A stretch of DNA of 64,000 nt, from sequence record NC_027399.1. One strand, 5' to 3'. Under the pieces are notes generated by a model. That model was not told the origin of the DNA. It made no database searches and saw nothing but the letters and a program-made list of their open reading frames with translations. Both the position numbers and the translations under genes were made by a program. This document shows positions 5,435-58,293 of the stretch, in pieces (the stretch's first letter is position 1; every line of letters begins with the position of its first letter).

Positions 5435-6055
5435 AATACATGGATGTTGGACATTCTTTTTGAAAAGAACGTATGGATAAAAACCCGATTAGCCGAAAAT
5501 GTAACGCTACGGATGAGTATAACCAACATATACGAGATGCAGAGGATACCCGAAAGGCGAGACGGCATCTAAAAGGATAGGAAATAGCACTGCCTATCCC
5601 AAGCTTACATTAGGCTTGATAGATCGCAAATCTGGTTGAGTCCAGACAAATAAAGAGTGTAAGGGAGATTATTTTCTTTTAGATATTTTGGAAATAATCA
5701 CAGTATTGAATTGCTTGAATAGTTCGGTACTGAAGTGCAAGTATGTTTAAACTTGTGACCGTTGCATGTGACTGCGATAGGACGAAACAGGGCAACCCGC
5801 GTTCGTGTACCAAAAAGTATAATTCGCAATTCAAGGAATTTCGACAGCTACGAGCTTCAAGGCTTAGCTTTTTTATTTCTCTTCCCCTCCCTGTGGGGGG
5901 ATGAAAATATCTCGTGCAAACGCCTTCAAGTATTGAAATTCACGAAGTGAATTGAAATTACTTGTTCTGTAGTCGAACGACAGTGAGACGTGAGAACAAG
6001 TAATTTCTGCATGTATCAACGAAGTGCAAACGGAGTTGATACATAGCACTTTAAA
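5435..6055 (+). ncRNA. Long structured non-coding element of unknown family
   Basis: No credible ORF, higher GC, more than 10 hairpins (AGATGC/GCATCT, GATAGG/CCTATC, GAAATTACTTGTTCT/AGAACAAGTAATTTC, ATGTATCAAC/GTTGATACAT). Confidence 0.55.
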
Positions 6056-40956: not shown

Positions 40957-41568
40957 ATGAATGTTATCGATACCATCTATTCTAAATCTTTTATCGAACT
41001 GAATGAAGAGCAGAAAGAAAAAGCAATCGATGTTATGCGGGAACTGGATCGCCATGATTCAGATCCATTCTGGGCACAATTAATTAATGAAGATAAACAA
41101 GAATTAATGAATAATGAATATGGTTTTACTGATGCTGTAATTCATTATAGCGGCTTTTGCTCACAAGGTGACGGGGCGTCAATTAGTACTGAATCAATCG
41201 ACGCTGAGACGTTTTTACGCAAAATTAAAGCATGGTCGAAATTCCGTGTATTGCATAAACATTTCAATGATGGTACTATTACATTAAAGATCGAACGCAA
41301 CGATCATCGTTATTCGCATGAAAATACTGTTTCTGGTGTGGTGGATTTGGATTATTATACTGAATTCACTGCTAAACAAGAAGAGAAAGCGGAAGAGCTG
41401 GAGACGCTTTTGACTGAAACTATCCGTGATCTTTCACGTCAACATTACCAGGAGTTAAGCGACGAAAACGATTATCAAAATAGTGATGAAGCATTGATTG
41501 AATCGATTAATGCAAATGATTATAATTTCAAAGTTAACAGTACTGGTAACGTATTGGGGTTAGCGTAA
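40957..41568 (+). CDS. Early hypothetical protein
   Basis: AAGGAG SD; YSGFCSQGDGASI motif. Confidence 0.85.
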   Translation: MNVIDTIYSKSFIELNEEQKEKAIDVMRELDRHDSDPFWAQLINEDKQELMNNEYGFTDAVIHYSGFCSQGDGASISTESIDAETFLRKIKAWSKFRVLHKHFNDGTITLKIERNDHRYSHENTVSGVVDLDYYTEFTAKQEEKAEELETLLTETIRDLSRQHYQELSDENDYQNSDEALIESINANDYNFKVNSTGNVLGLA

Positions 41569-42462: not shown

Positions 42463-42822
42463 ATGCGAGCTTTTAACGTTTATAAGAATGACAAAAAAAT
42501 TGACGTTGTTTATTATTCCGAAGTAATGACGGCAAAAGAAGTAACCGATTTGCTGAATAGCCGTGGTGAATACAACGGCGAAGTAAAAGCATTTCGGTCA
42601 TTGAATAGTGCGAATATTCGCACAGTACTGAAAAATGCTAAAACTGTTTTATTCAATGATGACGAATATTTTAATAAAGATGTTACGGGTATTAAAAACC
42701 TGGAAGATCTGAAAAGCCTTATTGGTATTAAAGGCAACGTATACAAAGTGGGGGAAGTCGGATCTCGCCATGAATATAAATTAGCCAATAGTGATTATAA
42801 ATTTTCAATCCTGGTAATGTAA
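42463..42822 (+). CDS. Early hypothetical protein
   Basis: Promoter-stem-loop-AAGGAG cassette. Confidence 0.8.
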   Translation: MRAFNVYKNDKKIDVVYYSEVMTAKEVTDLLNSRGEYNGEVKAFRSLNSANIRTVLKNAKTVLFNDDEYFNKDVTGIKNLEDLKSLIGIKGNVYKVGEVGSRHEYKLANSDYKFSILVM

Positions 42823-43027: not shown

Positions 43028-43242
43028 TGGAATATGAATTAATATATCACACTCGGTTATATGTTATTTTCTTTGAAATAACGTTATGGGGAGTAAAGGC
43101 AACGATTTATAATAAAGACGTTGCCGACGATCAAGAATGGATCGTTGTTGCAGAAGATAAAACGCCTCATGATTCGTTAAGTACTGATTTTAAATTATGC
43201 CGTGAATTATTAAAGAGAATAAGAAAAGATAATAATATATAA
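43027..43242 (+). CDS. Early hypothetical protein
   Basis: AAGGA SD, TAATG coupling. Confidence 0.75.
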   Translation: MEYELIYHTRLYVIFFEITLWGVKATIYNKDVADDQEWIVVAEDKTPHDSLSTDFKLCRELLKRIRKDNNI

Positions 43243-43245
43243 AAC

Positions 43246-43272
43246 AAAGGGGATCAATCGATCCCCTTTTTG
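43246..43272. terminator. Bidirectional intrinsic terminator
   Basis: AAAGGGGATC-AATC-GATCCCCTTTT. Confidence 0.85.
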
Positions 43273-43289
43273 TTTCAGTACTGAATTAA

Positions 43290-43400
43290 TAATAGATACA
43301 CTACGGCACCCTATGGGTCAGTGCCTTGTGTCCGGCTTATGTGGTTATTATGCCAGTACTGCGAACATAAGTCAATAGATGATTTGTAAAGAAGTGTAAA
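43290..43400 (-). ncRNA. Gene-less promoter element (CCC..GGGTG family)
   Basis: GTAAA-N5-GTAAA 43386..43400; TTGACT-17-CATAAT; GCC-GGACACAA-GGC; GACCCATAGGGTGCCGTAGTGTATCTAT. Confidence 0.65.
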
Positions 43401-43567
43401 TGCACAGGAAGCGTTTTAAGGCGTTAATCTGTTGCTGGTGGCTGATAGTACAGAGAAGTGTTTTAGATTGATTGTAGGCCGTTGTAGGCGTTTATAGATA
43501 GTAAAGTACTGATAATGTTTAATGATCCTGGTATGTGCAAATTATTTTAATTTTTTTCGTATTGGGT

Positions 43568-43950
43568 ATTGACGGATTATGTCAGTACTGGCATAATGTA
43601 TCACATAGAGCGACGGGCAAGACAAGTAGTCAACCTGTAAGACATACGAAAACCAGGTGACGTTGCACTGATTCAGTACTGAATAATACATAACATCTAA
43701 ATGTTGACAGTACTGAAAAATGTAGTATAATGATTCACAGAAAGAAGCAATCCAGTAAGCATGGATTAGTGATAAACGTAGGCCGGAATCACGAAAAACT
43801 TTCAAGGAAATACCCTTGTATAAAAAGGGAAGCGTTAAGCGTAGAACGTAAACGCGAAAATCCTAGCCTTGAACTGAAAAAGTAAACAAGGCAATTACAG
43901 AAAAAAGATTTAAAAAAGTAGTTGACAAGTACTAACGAGAATGAGATAAT
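43568..43950 (+). promoter_or_regulatory. Tandem strong promoters upstream of the H-NS-like gene
   Basis: TTGACG/CATAAT, TTGCAC/AATAAT, TTGACA/TATAAT, TTGACA/GATAAT, each containing AGTACT. Confidence 0.7.
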
Positions 43951-44003
43951 CTCTCTCGTTGAAACAAACAAACAATCTTAATCAAAACTTAAAGGTGAAT
44001 AAA

Positions 44004-44504
44004 ATGGCTAAACTGAATTCTGTTGTTGTTGCTCTGATCGCTGGTGATATCGCTGCTCTGAATGCTTCTTTCGCGTCGGTATCGATGGAAGATATGAAAA
44101 CTGTTCGTAACAACTTTAACGATTTTTACTCTAAATTCAAAGCTGCAAATGAAGCGGCGGAAGCGGCTGCAAAAGAGCGTAAAGCACAGATCGAAACCGA
44201 AACGAAAGAACTGGTAGACGCCCTGGTAACTGCTGGCCTGGATCTGGAAATGGCCGCCGAAGTCGCCAGCCAGAAAATGGCGGTGAAATATCCCGAACTG
44301 GCTCCGAAGTCGGGAACTGGTAAAACCTGGTCGTTTGAAACCGTATTCGTTAACGTTGACGGTGAAAAACTGGAAATTGGCACCAAAGGCAACAAAGGCA
44401 GTATGAAAGCACTGGCGGCGGCACGCGAAGCAATTGCCGCTGGCAAATACAAAGATCGTGCTGAATGGATCGCCGCTCACGCCTGGACTGAAACCGAAGC
44501 GTAA
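44004..44504 (+). CDS. H-NS/MvaT-like nucleoid-associated protein (putative)
   Basis: Ala/Glu-rich coiled coil ending ALVTAGLD (H-NS MLIADGID); KY...GTGKTWS (H-NS KY...GETKTWTG); GEKLEIGTKGN (MvaT GEVIETKGGN); highly expressed codon bias; AAGGTG SD. Confidence 0.55.
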   Translation: MAKLNSVVVALIAGDIAALNASFASVSMEDMKTVRNNFNDFYSKFKAANEAAEAAAKERKAQIETETKELVDALVTAGLDLEMAAEVASQKMAVKYPELAPKSGTGKTWSFETVFVNVDGEKLEIGTKGNKGSMKALAAAREAIAAGKYKDRAEWIAAHAWTETEA

Positions 44505-44525
44505 TAATTCAGTACTGTAATAATT

Positions 44526-44550
44526 AGCCTCCTGTAATTAGGAGGCTTTT
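44526..44550 (+). terminator. Intrinsic terminator
   Basis: AGCCTCCT-GTAATT-AGGAGGCT-TTT. Confidence 0.85.
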
Positions 44551-44583
44551 TATTTTGTTCAAAAAAATATTTTAATTTATTTT

Positions 44584-44740
44584 TTGAACGGACTTAAAAA
44601 ATCGGATATAATAATAAAGGGTGTTAATTACAGAGACCCCCATAGTGTTCGCTACGCTCACATAATGATCTTACTCGTTGCACTCGTAAGATCATTATCC
44701 AATCGGCCTTCGGCGATTTCTTTTTGATTTCCTACGGAAA
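44584..44740. other. Promoter followed by cluster of GNA-triloop hairpins
   Basis: TTGAAC-17-TATAAT; 13-bp perfect stem ATAATGATCTTAC/GTAAGATCATTAT; minus-strand GCGTAGC, GCCGAAGGC, TCCGTAGGA. Confidence 0.6.
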
Positions 44741-45111
44741 CCAAACGAAACCACCAGCAAAGGCAGATCCCATTATTTGATTTAGTTAGTACTGCAATGA
44801 ATTAGTTTAATCGCACTACAAAGCAATCAATCCCTTTTGTAATAGCTCATAGAACGCAATAAGACGCGTTTAAATGACTTCCCTATGTAATGCCATTCCT
44901 TTTTAATAAGTCCTCTTAAAACGCGTTACAGTTCGTTATACGGCGTTTAATAATACTCATCATTTCTTTTTCAAAAAGTACTTGCATTAATGATCCAGTA
45001 CTGCAATAATGTACTCACTGAAACGCAGTAAGTAAATGCAAATAAGTACTTGACAAAGTGTTGTAGTACTGGCATAATGAATACATCAAAACGATTAAGG
45101 AGAAACACCAA

Positions 45112-54176: not shown

Positions 54177-54533
54177 ATGATTACTAAATTCTATTCTTCC
54201 CGCGAAAAAGCTCGGATCGTAGCACGTGAAGAAGGCGAAACCTTCAAAGATATGGGTAAAGATTCCCCTGCTGGTCAACGCTGGGCAGTACTGTTCCGCG
54301 AGGTCAAAGACCTGGTAGAAAACGCTAAAGCGGTTGAAATGAACGTACCCACCAAAGAAGATAAAGATCTGACTGATGCCCTCGCCGCTGCATTCTCCGC
54401 GATGGATAAAGCCGCAGCGGTAGTACTGAAAGTACCGGAATTTGTAACCCGCAAAGTGCATTCAGTACTGCAAAATAAATTCAACGGTAAACAGGTTCAA
54501 GTGTTTACTAAACGTAAAATTCCGGTCATGTAA
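54177..54533 (+). CDS. Highly expressed early hypothetical protein
   Basis: Cassette with AAGGA; strong host-like codon bias; YSSREKAR...GQRWAV. Confidence 0.85.
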   Translation: MITKFYSSREKARIVAREEGETFKDMGKDSPAGQRWAVLFREVKDLVENAKAVEMNVPTKEDKDLTDALAAAFSAMDKAAAVVLKVPEFVTRKVHSVLQNKFNGKQVQVFTKRKIPVM

Positions 54534-56973: not shown

Positions 56974-57255
56974 ATGATTAACGGCACTCTGATTAANTAT
57001 GCAAAACGCCGCGATGTAGAAATAGAAGTACTGAAAGCAGGCGAAGTTGACGATGACGCTCAGGTATGGTTCTACACCGCAGACAATGACTGTGAACCAG
57101 TACTGATGTACCTGATTAATAATGATGGTTCTCTTACTTATCGTAGCAAACTGATGAAGTCACTGGAAGATATGCCAGCACATATCAATAATAAAGAAGT
57201 ACTGAAACGCGTAATCTGCTACATCTCAGACCAGCACAAAGCGGATATGATGTAA
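56974..57255 (+). CDS. Early hypothetical protein
   Basis: AAGGAG SD. Confidence 0.8.
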   Translation: MINGTLIXYAKRRDVEIEVLKAGEVDDDAQVWFYTADNDCEPVLMYLINNDGSLTYRSKLMKSLEDMPAHINNKEVLKRVICYISDQHKADMM

Positions 57256-57506: not shown

Positions 57507-57803
57507 ATGCAAGACAAATCAATTCACGTTCAAGTAGTTTCAAGCCGTGGCTATGACGATGTAGTACTGGATATCATGGTTAAAGATCTGCGGGACTATG
57601 CAATCATTGCACGTCATATCATGGTTAACTCCATTTGTATCAGTACTGGTGCTGATATGGAAGAAAACCGCTTACATATAGAGGAACATCTATACAAAGC
57701 ACGCATGAATGACAGCAGTGTATTCATCATTGAAGGTGCTGAGGGTAAAGAGTATACCGTATACCTTCGCCAGTACCTGGAAGTAGAAAAAGAAGAAGAT
57801 TAA
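57507..57803 (+). CDS. Early hypothetical protein
   Basis: AGGAG SD. Confidence 0.8.
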   Translation: MQDKSIHVQVVSSRGYDDVVLDIMVKDLRDYAIIARHIMVNSICISTGADMEENRLHIEEHLYKARMNDSSVFIIEGAEGKEYTVYLRQYLEVEKEED

Positions 57804-57894: not shown

Positions 57895-58293
57895 ATGTTT
57901 ACCATCACTTCTCGCCAGGATGTTCTGTACGTTGCTAAAACTTTTGGTCTGGAAGCACTGGATCATATCATCCGCAACAGTACTTTAACCCCTGAAGCCA
58001 ATCAGACTATCACTGAATGTCAGCGGTGGGCTGCATCAGAAGTGGTCAACATTGATTCATTCAATGATGGCAATACTGTATGGGAACTGGATGCATCTTT
58101 CAACGCTGTTAAAGTAGCAGGGATGTATATCACTGGCATTGATGATATTACTATCATCCGTTCGGGTATGGGTAACTTCTCCATGCCTTTACGTTCAGCA
58201 ATGGAAAGTAAAGAGATCAGTACAGAACAATGTGCAAATTTAATCAATGAGATTACCGCACGTAATGAAGCTGCTGCTATCCTTTACCCGTAG
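57895..58293 (+). CDS. Early hypothetical protein
   Basis: Promoter-stem-loop-AGGAG. Confidence 0.85.
   Translation: MFTITSRQDVLYVAKTFGLEALDHIIRNSTLTPEANQTITECQRWAASEVVNIDSFNDGNTVWELDASFNAVKVAGMYITGIDDITIIRSGMGNFSMPLRSAMESKEISTEQCANLINEITARNEAAAILYP

What the first reader, a model, noticed from the sequence alone, without database searches (positions are those of the whole stretch)
43568..44550. H-NS/MvaT-like protein under four tandem promoters in the early island
Seen: a 166-aa ORF with the strongest host-like codon bias in the window, four stacked promoters and its own terminator. By eye, the N-terminal helix and coiled coil ending LVTAGLD align with the H-NS oligomerisation region. KY...GTGKTWS recalls the H-NS DNA-binding motif but lacks the QGR hook, and GEKLEIGTKGN recalls MvaT. 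Established: AT-rich phage DNA is an H-NS target, and phages encode antagonists (T7 5.5, T4 Arn). Inference: a dominant-negative anti-silencer or the phage's own nucleoid protein, and a candidate reader of AGTACT.
Basis: inference. Interest (0 to 1): 0.7.

Follow-up and report, generated by a model that had tools for sequence, protein, structure and literature searches.

The report
Divergent H-NS-like early protein of jumbo phage
A Klebsiella jumbo phage carries, near the end of its genome, a heavily expressed gene for a distant look-alike of the bacterial gene-silencing protein H-NS; the look-alike lacks H-NS's key DNA-gripping arginine and may help the phage escape or take over host silencing.

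Summary
The window is Klebsiella jumbo phage K64-1 (Alcyoneusvirus, RaK2-like). The 166-aa ORF is real (44004..44504, RefSeq gp430 'DNA-binding protein').

Expression signals:
- It is a self-contained unit with its own Shine-Dalgarno site and terminator.
- It has the best host-optimal codon usage of 162 ORFs in the window.
- It has three, not four, consensus-grade sigma-70 promoters. Two are conserved across the genus.

H-NS resemblance is supported:
- Pfam Histone_HNS_N scores above its gathering threshold.
- A collinear profile-profile alignment to H-NS/StpA covers 115 columns; none of 200 shuffles reaches its score.
- The AlphaFold topology matches H-NS.
- An H-NS family cluster is the top ESM Atlas shape match.

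It is not a canonical member:
- The C-terminal Pfam models for H-NS and MvaT do not match.
- The QGR arginine hook is replaced by an invariant Gly-Asn.
- The basic linker is weak, and the protein ends in an acidic tail.
- No specific MvaT relationship was found.

The family is conserved across RaK2-like jumbo phages of Enterobacterales. Where genome ends are known, the gene lies 1.5-7 kb from the left end, inside the ~20-kb terminal repeat.

Function is inferred, not shown. My best guess is an abundant immediate-early H-NS mimic that interferes with host H-NS silencing. A complex prediction with H-NS gave only weak support. The proposed AGTACT 'reader' role is untested.

The parts
43246..43269 (.). 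Bidirectional terminator hairpin that closes the upstream gene block and isolates the unit.
   Evidence: 10-bp stem, T-runs on both strands. Conserved in five phages.
43569..43597 (+). Promoter-like site P1 (TTGACG-17-CATAAT, extended -10 TG, AGTACT in the spacer). The start site would lie near 43604, giving a leader of about 400 nt.
   Evidence: Invariant in K64-1, Muenster, RaK2, KP13-7 and phiKp_21. The same hexamer pair lies upstream of the homolog in L006.
43657..43687 (+). Weak candidate fourth promoter (GTGACG-19-AATAAT, 9 of 12). Probably not functional.
   Evidence: Mutated in RaK2 and KP13-7.
43704..43731 (+). Promoter-like site P2 (TTGACA-16-TATAAT, 12 of 12). It lies at the edge of an insertion of about 190 bp.
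   Evidence: Its -10 hexamer and the insertion are present only in K64-1 and Muenster. The short form also appears in a metatranscriptome contig.
43922..43950 (+). Promoter-like site P3 (TTGACA-17-GATAAT, extended -10 TG, AGTACT directly after the -35). It is the promoter nearest the gene, with a leader of about 47 nt.
   Evidence: Invariant in five phages. The same hexamers occur in L006.
43992..43997 (+). Shine-Dalgarno sequence AAGGTG, 6 nt upstream of the ATG.
   Evidence: Read directly from the sequence. Annotated as an RBS in Muenster.
44004..44504 (+). CDS of 166 aa, the H-NS-like protein (gp430).
44004..44291 (+). N-terminal helical part, aa 1-96. Two short helices, a 49-residue helix, the invariant G78-L79-D80-L81 turn (44235-44246) and helix 4. 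This is the layout of H-NS oligomerisation sites 1 and 2.
   Evidence: Pfam PF22470 on aa 12-71. AlphaFold helices 2-13, 16-22, 28-76 and 81-95. hhalign. ESM Atlas shape match over residues 2-93. The segment 78-96 is among the best conserved in the family.
44292..44327 (+). Linker, aa 97-108. pLDDT is low around 104-108. Net charge is 0 to +3 across the family, against about +5 for the H-NS linker.
44328..44480 (+). C-terminal domain, aa 109-159. A beta-hairpin, a loop with invariant G129-N130 (44388-44393), a helix and a short helix. The topology is that of the H-NS DNA-binding domain, with Asn in place of the Arg hook.
   Evidence: AlphaFold strands 113-118 and 121-126, helices 134-145 and 152-158. 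hhalign on this domain alone scores 16.8, reached by 1 of 120 shuffles. PF00816 and PF22055 are not matched.
44481..44501 (+). Acidic C-terminal tail (AWTETEA). Family members have tails with net charge +1 to -6, acidic in 24 of 27, mostly ending in AE or EA.
44526..44557 (+). Intrinsic terminator (AGCCTCCTGTAATTAGGAGGCT followed by a T-run).
   Evidence: Annotated as a terminator in Muenster.

Best explanation
SHOWN
- gp430 is a divergent relative or close structural mimic of the bacterial nucleoid protein H-NS.
- It has the full H-NS layout: two short helices, one long helix, a G-[IL]-D turn, a fourth helix, a linker, then a small beta-hairpin-plus-helix domain.
- The gene is a monocistronic unit with tandem sigma-70 promoters, a strong ribosome site, its own terminator and the most host-optimal codons in its neighbourhood.
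- These expression features recur in three divergent genera of RaK2-like jumbo phages.

INFERRED FROM PLACEMENT
- The gene lies a few kb from the left genome end, inside the ~20-kb direct terminal repeat.
- It would therefore be present twice per packaged genome and be among the first genes available to host RNA polymerase.

INFERRED MECHANISM
- The protein is made in near-stoichiometric amounts with host H-NS immediately after infection.
- It uses its H-NS-like N-terminal sites to enter or cap H-NS/StpA oligomers.
- Its C-terminal domain has Asn where H-NS has the minor-groove Arg, has a weak basic linker and ends in an acidic tail. Mixed filaments would therefore grip AT-rich DNA poorly.
- This would relieve xenogeneic silencing of a phage genome of 32% GC in a host of ~57% GC.
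For: H-NS homology or mimicry
- PF22470 E = 4e-6, above its gathering score.
- hhalign covers 115 collinear columns at score 29.5; shuffles reach at most 18.7.
- The C-terminal domain alone scores 16.8, reached by 1 of 120 shuffles.
- AlphaFold model with mean pLDDT 83 and H-NS topology.
- An H-NS cluster is the top ESM Atlas shape hit, with 79 residues aligned at rmsd 2.8 A.
- A language-model feature search with residues 100-166 returns Histone_HNS and MvaT_DBD in 83 of its 100 nearest clusters and Histone_HNS_N in 2; the other 15 carry no common family (a lead only).
- Muenster's depositors recorded an HHpred hit to StpA.

High, early expression
- Codon-optimality rank 1 here and also in loci L002, L006 and L008.
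- Tandem promoters and flanking terminators are conserved.
- Position inside the terminal repeat, near the left end, in Muenster, CBB, vB_Ec-M-J, fHe-Yen9 and others.

Interaction with H-NS
- ESMFold2 complex of phage residues 1-100 with H-NS 1-83: ipSAE 0.40, 0.34 and 0.33 against 0.00 in three controls.
- The interface falls on H-NS residues 7-44, which is site 1. The tool grades this 'weak support'.

Altered DNA grip
- Asn replaces Arg114 in all 27 family members.
- The C-terminal part has net charge -3 to +1, against +4 to +6 in H-NS, StpA and Pmr.

Host range fits
- All phages found to carry the family infect Enterobacterales, which have H-NS.
- These phages are AT-rich: the Muenster genome is 31.9% GC against about 57.7% for its host (PMC8407769), and this window is 32% GC.
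Against: - No experiment or transcriptome shows expression, oligomerisation, H-NS binding or DNA binding.
- The metatranscriptome contigs are sparse and cannot separate RNA from DNA.
- The complex score of 0.34 lies in the range the tool says is 'more often wrong than right unless the guess was likely beforehand'. It may only reflect likeness to solved H-NS dimers.
- The N-terminal 77 residues are poorly conserved within the family (30-37% identity), while host H-NS N-termini are nearly invariant. That pattern fits a co-evolving self-interface better than a fixed host target.
- The best-conserved segments include the GN loop and the beta-hairpin. This argues that the C-terminal domain does something specific, possibly binding DNA, rather than being a dead domain.
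- The H-NS core domain is itself not basic, so the charge argument rests mainly on the linker and the lost Arg.
- Foldseek and VIA-align searches of PDB and AlphaFold DB did not retrieve H-NS.
Confidence: 0.42

Rival explanations
1. The phage's own nucleoid-associated protein. gp430 self-oligomerises as H-NS does and binds DNA through the GN-loop domain. It would coat phage DNA, to exclude host H-NS, nucleases or defence systems, or it would coat host DNA to shut it off. It might recognise the hyper-abundant AGTACT palindrome or help switch off the immediate-early promoters that contain it.
For: - Both H-NS functional hot spots are the best-conserved parts of the family: the site-2 turn at 53% identity and the GN loop at 58%.
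- G-N is invariant in 27 members.
- Basic residues lie just before the first beta-strand, as in H-NS (KAKKYTF against RPAKYSY).
- Very high expression would also suit an abundant DNA-coating protein.
- AGTACT is over-represented 13.6-fold in the window and 17-20-fold in the early regions of every relative checked that carries the family.
- AGTACT sits at fixed offsets in 25 of 38 promoter-like sites inside the putative terminal repeat.
Against: - The Arg hook is missing, and the Pfam H-NS and MvaT DNA-binding models do not match.
- The core C-terminal domain has net charge about 0 (range -5 to +2) and is followed in most members by an acidic tail.
- H-NS-type domains read minor-groove shape rather than a specific hexamer (established knowledge).
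- The co-occurrence with AGTACT is a clade-wide trait shared with hundreds of other genes.
Confidence: 0.33
2. A coiled-coil early protein whose likeness to H-NS is convergent or vestigial. It would act on another target, for example as an adaptor or inhibitor of a host enzyme, RNA polymerase or a defence system, with no link to H-NS or DNA.
For: - Distant family members do not match PF22470; only 5 of 27 do.
- The hhalign probability is only 33-36%.
- Structure searches of solved and Swiss-Prot models give only generic long-helix matches.
- The N-terminal part is Ala/Glu/Lys-rich, a composition prone to spurious coiled-coil hits.
Against: - The hhalign score lies 7.7 sd above column-shuffled controls that keep composition.
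- The alignment is collinear over both domains, including the non-helical C-terminal domain in the correct register.
- The ESM Atlas shape and feature searches independently point to H-NS.
Confidence: 0.15
3. A recently captured host hns gene, with its high GC content and host codon usage simply left over from horizontal transfer.
For: The ORF has 49% GC in a genome of 32% GC.
Against: - BLASTP against E. coli H-NS and StpA is not significant, and profile identity is 17%.
- GC3 is only 0.46 and the favoured codons are the translationally optimal set, not simply GC-ending ones.
- The family is old and clade-wide, with about 30% identity between genera, and is codon-optimised in each genus.
- tblastn with E. 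coli H-NS against 50,697 phage records finds no phage copy.
Confidence: 0.03

Closest known systems
H-NS / StpA of Enterobacterales (Pfam PF22470 + PF00816)
   Same: - The order of secondary-structure elements matches from end to end.
- The N-terminal Pfam domain is matched.
- The G-[IL]-D turn of oligomerisation site 2 is present.
- The C-terminal domain has the same beta-hairpin, loop and helix in the same register, and the loop has the same length (G104...G113 against G120...G129).
- The overall pI is similar, at about 5.4.
   Different: - Profile identity is about 17%.
- The C-terminal Pfam model is not matched.
- Q112-G113-R114 is replaced by K/S-G-N.
- The basic linker is weaker.
- Alcyoneusvirus members carry a 5-residue insertion after the GN.
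- The protein ends in an acidic tail.
- It is encoded by a lytic jumbo phage.
H-NST (truncated H-NS antagonists of pathogenic E. coli islands) and plasmid or island paralogues such as Sfh and Hfp
   Same: It is a horizontally carried H-NS-like protein that could act through heteromerisation with resident H-NS. H-NST is described as antagonising H-NS through N-terminal heterodimerisation (PMC8501957, PMC7074111).
   Different: - H-NST lacks a C-terminal domain, whereas gp430 keeps a conserved but altered one.
- Sfh and Hfp are close full-length H-NS paralogues with an intact QGR motif.
- gp430 is far more divergent.
- Its heteromerisation has only weak in-silico support.
Phage anti-H-NS proteins: T7 gp5.5, T4 Arn, T4 MotB, LUZ24 gp4 (Mip)
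   Same: They are early phage proteins aimed at xenogeneic silencers of AT-rich DNA. gp5.5 targets H-NS oligomerisation site 2 (PMC8501957).
   Different: - None of them is an H-NS homolog. Arn is a DNA mimic; gp5.5 and gp4 are small unrelated binders.
- gp430 would work by mimicry of H-NS itself. This is inferred, not shown.
Phage-encoded xenogeneic-silencer homologs: H-NS of phage EPV1, Lsr2 homologs of actinophages, CgpS
   Same: It is a silencer-family protein encoded by a phage (PMC3097231, PMC7074111).
   Different: - EPV1 H-NS is closely related to its host's hns.
- According to PMC7074111, the Lsr2 homologs are relatively more frequent in lysogenic than in lytic actinophages, and CgpS is encoded by a prophage.
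- gp430 belongs to an old, divergent family in strictly lytic jumbo phages.
- BLAST with H-NS cannot find it.
MvaT / Pmr (Pseudomonas; PF22055)
   Same: The DNA-contact loop position holds 'G-N' (TKGGN in MvaT/Pmr, TKGN here), preceded by G-E-x-[LV]-E.
   Different: - There is no profile similarity (P = 0.09).
- PF22055 is not matched.
- The loop is one residue longer than in MvaT and equal in length to that of H-NS.
- The N-terminal domain matches the H-NS model, not MvaT.

Membership tests
H-NS family (Pfam Histone_HNS_N + Histone_HNS) | The N-terminal oligomerisation domain matches PF22470 above its gathering score. | tested here: met
   27.1 bits against a cut-off of 24.5, E = 4e-6, aa 12-71. 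Only the 5 Alcyoneusvirus members of the 27 family members pass.
H-NS family (Pfam Histone_HNS_N + Histone_HNS) | [quoted passage not shown] | tested here: not met
   No match at E <= 10 in the protein. No match at E <= 1 anywhere in the K64-1 genome in six frames.
H-NS family (Pfam Histone_HNS_N + Histone_HNS) | Conserved T-W-T-G-Q-G-R-T-P loop with the minor-groove Arg (R114). | tested here: not met
   The aligned loop is E-I-G-T-K-G-N. Asn is invariant at the Arg position in 27 members.
H-NS family (Pfam Histone_HNS_N + Histone_HNS) | Overall architecture: alpha1, alpha2, long alpha3, turn, alpha4, flexible linker, beta-hairpin, helix, short helix. | tested here: met
   AlphaFold model with pLDDT 83. 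Collinear hhalign over 115 columns, with 0 of 200 shuffles reaching the score. An H-NS cluster is the top ESM Atlas shape hit for residues 2-93. Foldseek and VIA-align searches of PDB and AlphaFold DB found no H-NS.
H-NS family (Pfam Histone_HNS_N + Histone_HNS) | Basic linker that supports DNA binding. | tested here: inconclusive
   Linker net charge is +1 here and -1 to +3 across the family, against about +5 in H-NS. The C-terminal part overall is -3 to +1, against +4 to +6.
H-NS family (Pfam Histone_HNS_N + Histone_HNS) | Self-oligomerisation and heteromerisation with H-NS paralogues. | tested here: inconclusive
   Predicted complex with H-NS 1-83: ipSAE 0.34 against 0.00 for controls, graded 'weak support', with the interface on site 1.
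H-NS family (Pfam Histone_HNS_N + Histone_HNS) | Binding and bridging of AT-rich DNA, and silencing. | not testable with these tools
   This needs EMSA, bridging, reporter or ChIP experiments.
MvaT family (PF22055 MvaT_DBD) | The C-terminal domain matches PF22055. | tested here: not met
   No match in the protein or in the whole genome. The same search found Pmr on pCAR1 at E = 9e-23, which serves as a positive control.
MvaT family (PF22055 MvaT_DBD) | Profile similarity to MvaT/Pmr proteins. | tested here: not met
   hhalign of A4 against A6: P = 0.094, 22 columns in an unrelated N-terminal segment. Caveat: H-NS against MvaT is also not detected by this test.
MvaT family (PF22055 MvaT_DBD) | 'AT-pincer' G-N in the loop after the beta-hairpin (my own knowledge of the MvaT-DNA structure). 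| tested here: inconclusive
   G-N is present and invariant. The loop is one residue longer than in MvaT/Pmr, and the partner Arg of the pincer cannot be identified.
H-NST-type truncated antagonists | An H-NS N-terminal domain only, with no C-terminal domain. | tested here: not met
   gp430 has a conserved, confidently modelled C-terminal domain of about 50 residues.

The most novel reading that the evidence does not exclude
gp430 and its relatives would be a phage-specific chromatin protein. Their modified H-NS-type domain (a GN loop instead of QGR) would read the AGTACT palindrome. That palindrome is over-represented 14- to 20-fold in RaK2-like jumbo phages and is built into their terminal-repeat promoters. 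The protein would form filaments that mark phage DNA as 'self', exclude host H-NS and defence nucleases, and time the shut-off of immediate-early promoters.
Probability: 0.1. Interest if true: 0.85.

Novelty: new variant of a known kind. Interest (0 to 1): 0.58.

Why it matters
H-NS silences AT-rich foreign DNA, and the known phage countermeasures are small unrelated inhibitors such as T7 gp5.5, T4 Arn and LUZ24 gp4. In RaK2-like jumbo phages, an entire clade of lytic phages of Enterobacterales, the most strongly expression-optimised immediate-early gene encodes a divergent copy of H-NS itself, with the DNA-gripping arginine replaced.

If it acts on host silencing, it would be a mimicry-based anti-silencing strategy. 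It would also be a natural experiment on which H-NS features are needed for oligomerisation and which for DNA grip.

If it instead binds DNA, it would be a phage-encoded chromatin protein. It might be linked to the unexplained AGTACT hyper-abundance.

Either way the hypotheses can be tested directly with standard assays. The family is currently annotated as 'hypothetical protein' in all but two of the phage records listed by the searches.

Tried and rejected
- PDB sequence searches with the protein and with a family profile gave only chance hits.
- Foldseek against PDB and AlphaFold DB Swiss-Prot, and VIA-align wide, did not find H-NS. The matches were dominated by the 49-residue helix.
- Foldseek against BFVD returned only family members.
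- NCBIfam gave nothing.
- The first AlphaFold run, with 7 near-identical sequences, was poor (pLDDT 63). It was replaced by the run with 27 sequences.
- An exhaustive representative search found only 6 clusters, so the family is small and confined to phages.
- The MvaT relationship was rejected.
- Recent capture of host hns was rejected.
- A structured leader RNA between P1 and P3 was rejected. The fold z-score is -0.5 and there is only one compensatory pair between two lineages.
- Rfam and tRNA scans of the region found nothing significant.
- The 51-aa ORF at 43730-43885 inside the insertion is probably not a gene. Its ATG overlaps the P2 -10 hexamer, it has no ribosome site, and it is absent from RaK2 and KP13-7.
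- Wastewater metatranscriptome contigs touch the ORF in three of four RNA runs, and a fourth run covers only the 5' leader and start codon. Depth is low, strand information is absent and DNA carry-over cannot be excluded, so this is inconclusive.
Full report
IDENTITY OF THE WINDOW

Window 43300-44800 is 100% identical to Klebsiella phage K64-1, NC_027399 229300-230800. K64-1 is a 346.6-kb RaK2-like jumbo myophage of the genus Alcyoneusvirus. Record coordinate equals window coordinate plus 186,000. The ORF is ACQ27_gp430, annotated 'DNA-binding protein'. NP_417155.1 is E. coli StpA.

THE OBSERVATION

The ORF:
- It runs from ATG 44004 to the stop at 44504 and encodes 166 aa.
- AAGGTG lies 6 nt upstream of the ATG.
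- A terminator lies at 44526-44547.
- The longer TTG start at 43959 would lie at the start site of the nearest promoter, so it is unlikely to be used.

Codon bias:
- Of 162 ATG-ORFs of at least 60 aa in the window, this ORF has the highest fraction of E. coli-type optimal codons: 0.78 against a median of 0.44.
- All 10 Leu codons are CTG.
- GC is 49% against 32%.
- GC3 is only 0.46. The signal is therefore selection for translationally optimal codons, not a host-GC remnant.

Promoters:
- The consensus scan finds three strong sigma-70-like sites: P1 (43569-43597), P2 (43704-43731, 12 of 12) and P3 (43922-43950).
- A fourth candidate (43657-43687) is weak.
- An alignment of five Alcyoneusviruses shows P1 and P3 to be invariant.
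- P2 belongs to an insertion of about 190 bp found only in K64-1 and Muenster.
- No + strand terminator lies between P1 and the gene, so all three promoters would read into it.
- The leader shows no significant structure (z = -0.5).

WHAT THE PROTEIN IS

Sequence searches:
- Pfam gives Histone_HNS_N (PF22470) at 27.1 bits (cut-off 24.5, E = 4e-6) on residues 12-71.
- PHROGs places the protein in phrog_27871, of unknown function.
- Sequence searches find only phage and metagenome relatives: 7 close ones, 6 clusters in the exhaustive library, and 34 with a family profile.

Conserved positions in a 27-member alignment, where members share about 30% identity with the window protein:
- F38 and K46.
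- G78-L79-D80-L81.
- A88 and K95.
- V116 and G120.
- G129-N130.
- I156.

Structure model. With this alignment AlphaFold2 gives a model with mean pLDDT 83. Its elements are:
- Helices 2-13, 16-22, 28-76 and 81-95.
- A disordered linker around residues 104-108.
- Strands 113-118 and 121-126.
- Helices 134-145 and 152-158.

From my own knowledge of the solved H-NS 1-83 and C-terminal-domain structures, this is the H-NS order of elements.

Profile-profile comparison with H-NS:
- I built a 13-sequence H-NS/StpA alignment (A5) and compared it with the family alignment using hhalign.
- With default settings, 89 columns align at P = 4.7e-4.
- With -M first, 115 columns align: phage 27-158 to H-NS 22-136, score 29.5, P = 3.7e-4.
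- Two hundred column-shuffled H-NS alignments scored 11.8 +/- 2.3, with a maximum of 18.7. The reversed alignment scored 19.2.

The alignment pairs these residues:
- G78-L79-D80 with G69-I70-D71, the site-2 turn.
- K107-F111 with A95-Y99.
- G120 with G104.
- G129-N130 with G113-R114.

The C-terminal domains alone score 16.8 in the same register, and 1 of 120 shuffles reaches this.

Independent leads that agree:
- The ESM Atlas shape search ranks an H-NS family cluster first: residues 2-93, 79 aligned, rmsd 2.8 A, TM 0.39 by the query and 0.47 by the hit.
- A language-model feature search with residues 100-166 alone returns Histone_HNS or MvaT_DBD for almost all of its named clusters (83 of the 100 nearest; 2 more carry only Histone_HNS_N). 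Scores are 0.54-0.61, which the tool treats as a lead only.

WHERE IT IS NOT H-NS

- PF00816 (the H-NS C-terminal domain) and PF22055 (MvaT_DBD) match neither the protein nor any frame of the K64-1 genome.
- Only the 5 Alcyoneusvirus members pass PF22470.
- BLASTP against H-NS and StpA is not significant.
- The Arg of the QGR hook is Asn in every member.
- The C-terminal part has net charge -3 to +1, against +4 to +6 in H-NS, StpA and Pmr.
  - The core domain is near 0.
  - The linker is -1 to +3.
  - The tail is +1 to -6, acidic in 24 of 27 members, and usually ends in AE or EA.
- Foldseek (PDB, Swiss-Prot models) and VIA-align did not retrieve H-NS. The long helix dominates those matches.

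A specific MvaT link is not supported. hhalign against a 12-member MvaT/Pmr alignment gives P = 0.09 on an unrelated segment. The same test also fails to connect H-NS with MvaT. The GN loop has the H-NS length, one residue longer than in MvaT.

DISTRIBUTION AND GENOMIC PLACEMENT

tblastn with the window protein and with one distant family member (P0034) together finds the family in the following phages, nearly always annotated 'hypothetical protein':
- Alcyoneusvirus phages of Klebsiella.
- 121Q, PBECO4 and other Asteriusvirus phages of E. coli.
- Salmonella phages Munch and 7t3.
- Cronobacter phage GAP32.
- Pectobacterium phage CBB.
- Serratia phage BF.
- Yersinia phage fHe-Yen9.
- Several Erwinia phages.

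In records opened at the physical ends, the gene lies 1.5-7 kb from the left end, inside the direct terminal repeat:
- Muenster, at 5709.
- CBB, at 2184, annotated 'redundant repeat'.
- fHe-Yen9-04, gene g001.
- vB_Ec-M-J, annotated 'Direct Terminal Repeats', with two places in the record.

Terminal repeats of about 20 kb are reported or verified for this clade (PMC8407769, PMC5259590, PMC13070987). Muenster base 1 maps to window 38181 and the end of its repeat to about 58573. By homology, the gene therefore starts 5.8 kb from the putative K64-1 left end. The ends of K64-1 itself have not been determined.

In two distant loci, L006 (Munch-like) and L008 (121Q-like), the homolog again has the best codon optimality of its 12-kb neighbourhood. 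It is again bracketed by terminators. In L006 it is preceded by the same TTGACG...CATAAT and TTGACA...GATAAT pair.

A tblastn search with E. coli H-NS against 50,697 phage records returns only one record, and that is a bacterial contig. The reviews I read list EPV1 H-NS and actinophage Lsr2 as the phage-encoded silencer homologs and do not mention this family (PMC7074111, PMC3097231). I found no paper on it.

HOW IT PROBABLY WORKS

Shown:
- H-NS-like architecture.
- Family-wide conservation.
- Signals for very high expression.
- Placement in the terminal repeat.
- Loss of the Arg hook.

Inferred:
- Host RNA polymerase transcribes the gene immediately after DNA entry. This follows from the sigma-70-type promoters. 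The CBB paper calls the equivalent region of short ORFs with RpoD-like promoters the early region (PMC5259590).
- Large amounts of protein are made. H-NS is a very abundant protein, so a stoichiometric antagonist needs this.

My preferred mechanism is co-oligomerisation with host H-NS/StpA through the N-terminal sites. This would give filaments with a weakened grip on DNA and relieve silencing of a 32%-GC genome in a ~57%-GC host.

The only direct computation is a predicted complex of residues 1-100 with H-NS 1-83:
- ipSAE was 0.40, 0.34 and 0.33, against 0.00 in three controls.
- The interface fell on H-NS residues 7-44 and phage residues 4-49.
- The tool grades this 'weak support' and warns that such a pass may only reflect likeness to solved complexes.

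Evidence against this mechanism:
- The N-terminal 77 residues are the least conserved part of the family (30-37% identity).
- The site-2 turn (53%), the GN loop (58%) and the hairpin (46%) are the most conserved.
- This pattern suggests a self-interface together with a functional C-terminal domain.

The main rival is therefore a phage-owned DNA-coating protein. I put it at about 0.33, against 0.42 for the antagonist model.

AGTACT

The palindrome is a real and striking feature, but its link to this protein is untested.
- The window holds 293 sites against 21.5 expected. The next most enriched palindrome is at 1.9-fold.
- CAGTACTG occurs 242 times in the genome, against 1 for the reversed control pattern.
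- Density is 3.6 per kb inside ORFs and 8.1 per kb outside.
- Enrichment of 17-20-fold recurs in the early regions of Muenster and of Munch-like and 121Q-like relatives.
- Inside the putative terminal repeat, 25 of 38 promoter-like sites contain AGTACT at fixed offsets: AGTACTGnCATAAT, which overlaps the extended -10 TG, and AGTACTTGACA. Outside the repeat the count is 4 of 54.

VERDICT

The H-NS-like interpretation is supported, as a divergent variant rather than a canonical member. The MvaT comparison is not supported beyond a two-residue motif. Function remains inferred. I score interest at 0.58. The family is conserved, highly expressed and uncharacterised, and it makes H-NS mimicry by lytic phages directly testable. 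A database annotation had already hinted at the homology.

Noticed in passing
whole window; also L002, L006, L007, L008, L009: The palindrome AGTACT is hugely over-represented. The window holds 293 sites against 21.5 expected. CAGTACTG occurs 242 times in the K64-1 genome, against 1 for a reversed control pattern. Enrichment of 17-20-fold also appears in the early regions of distant RaK2-like phages. Nineteen site pairs are spaced exactly 20 bp apart. The held literature offers no explanation.
   Followed up: partly
window 38181-58573: This is the putative direct terminal repeat of about 20.4 kb, located by homology to the PhageTerm-defined ends of phage Muenster. Inside it, 25 of 38 + strand promoter-like sites carry AGTACT at fixed offsets (+15 and -5 from the start of the -35 hexamer). 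Outside it, 4 of 54 do. This looks like a distinct class of immediate-early promoter.
   Followed up: partly
window 43238-43375, - strand: A candidate small RNA of about 100 nt. It has a minus-strand promoter at 43375->43347 (TTGACT-17-CATAAT, with the same CAGTACTGGCATAAT form), a hairpin and the bidirectional terminator at 43269-43246. The fold z-score is -4.0 and the region is nearly invariant in five phages. There is no Rfam match.
   Followed up: partly
window 44584-44730, + strand: A candidate small RNA of about 105 nt just downstream of the gene. It has a promoter at 44584-44612 (TTGAAC-17-TATAAT), a 13-bp hairpin and a hairpin followed by a U-run. The fold z-score is -2.7. There is no credible ORF, no tRNA and no significant Rfam match.
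   Followed up: partly
window 43715-43900: An insertion of about 190 bp between P1 and P3, present only in K64-1 and Muenster. It brings the perfect-consensus promoter P2 and a very basic 51-aa ORF (43730-43885) that is probably not translated. The short form without the insertion is seen in RaK2, KP13-7, phiKp_21 and one wastewater RNA-library contig.
   Followed up: partly
window 54177-54533, 56974-57255, 57507-57803, 57895-58293: Four further small + strand ORFs with unusually host-optimal codons (Fop 0.64-0.74, GC 40-45%). They lie near the right edge of the putative terminal repeat and may be other very highly expressed early proteins.
   Followed up: no
window 40957-41568 and 42463-42822: RefSeq annotates a YeeU-like (CbeA-type) antitoxin homolog just upstream. 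It also annotates a 119-aa ORF as 'phosphoribosylpyrophosphate synthetase'. That looks doubtful, because the Muenster depositors note flavodoxin-like HHpred hits for the ortholog.
   Followed up: no
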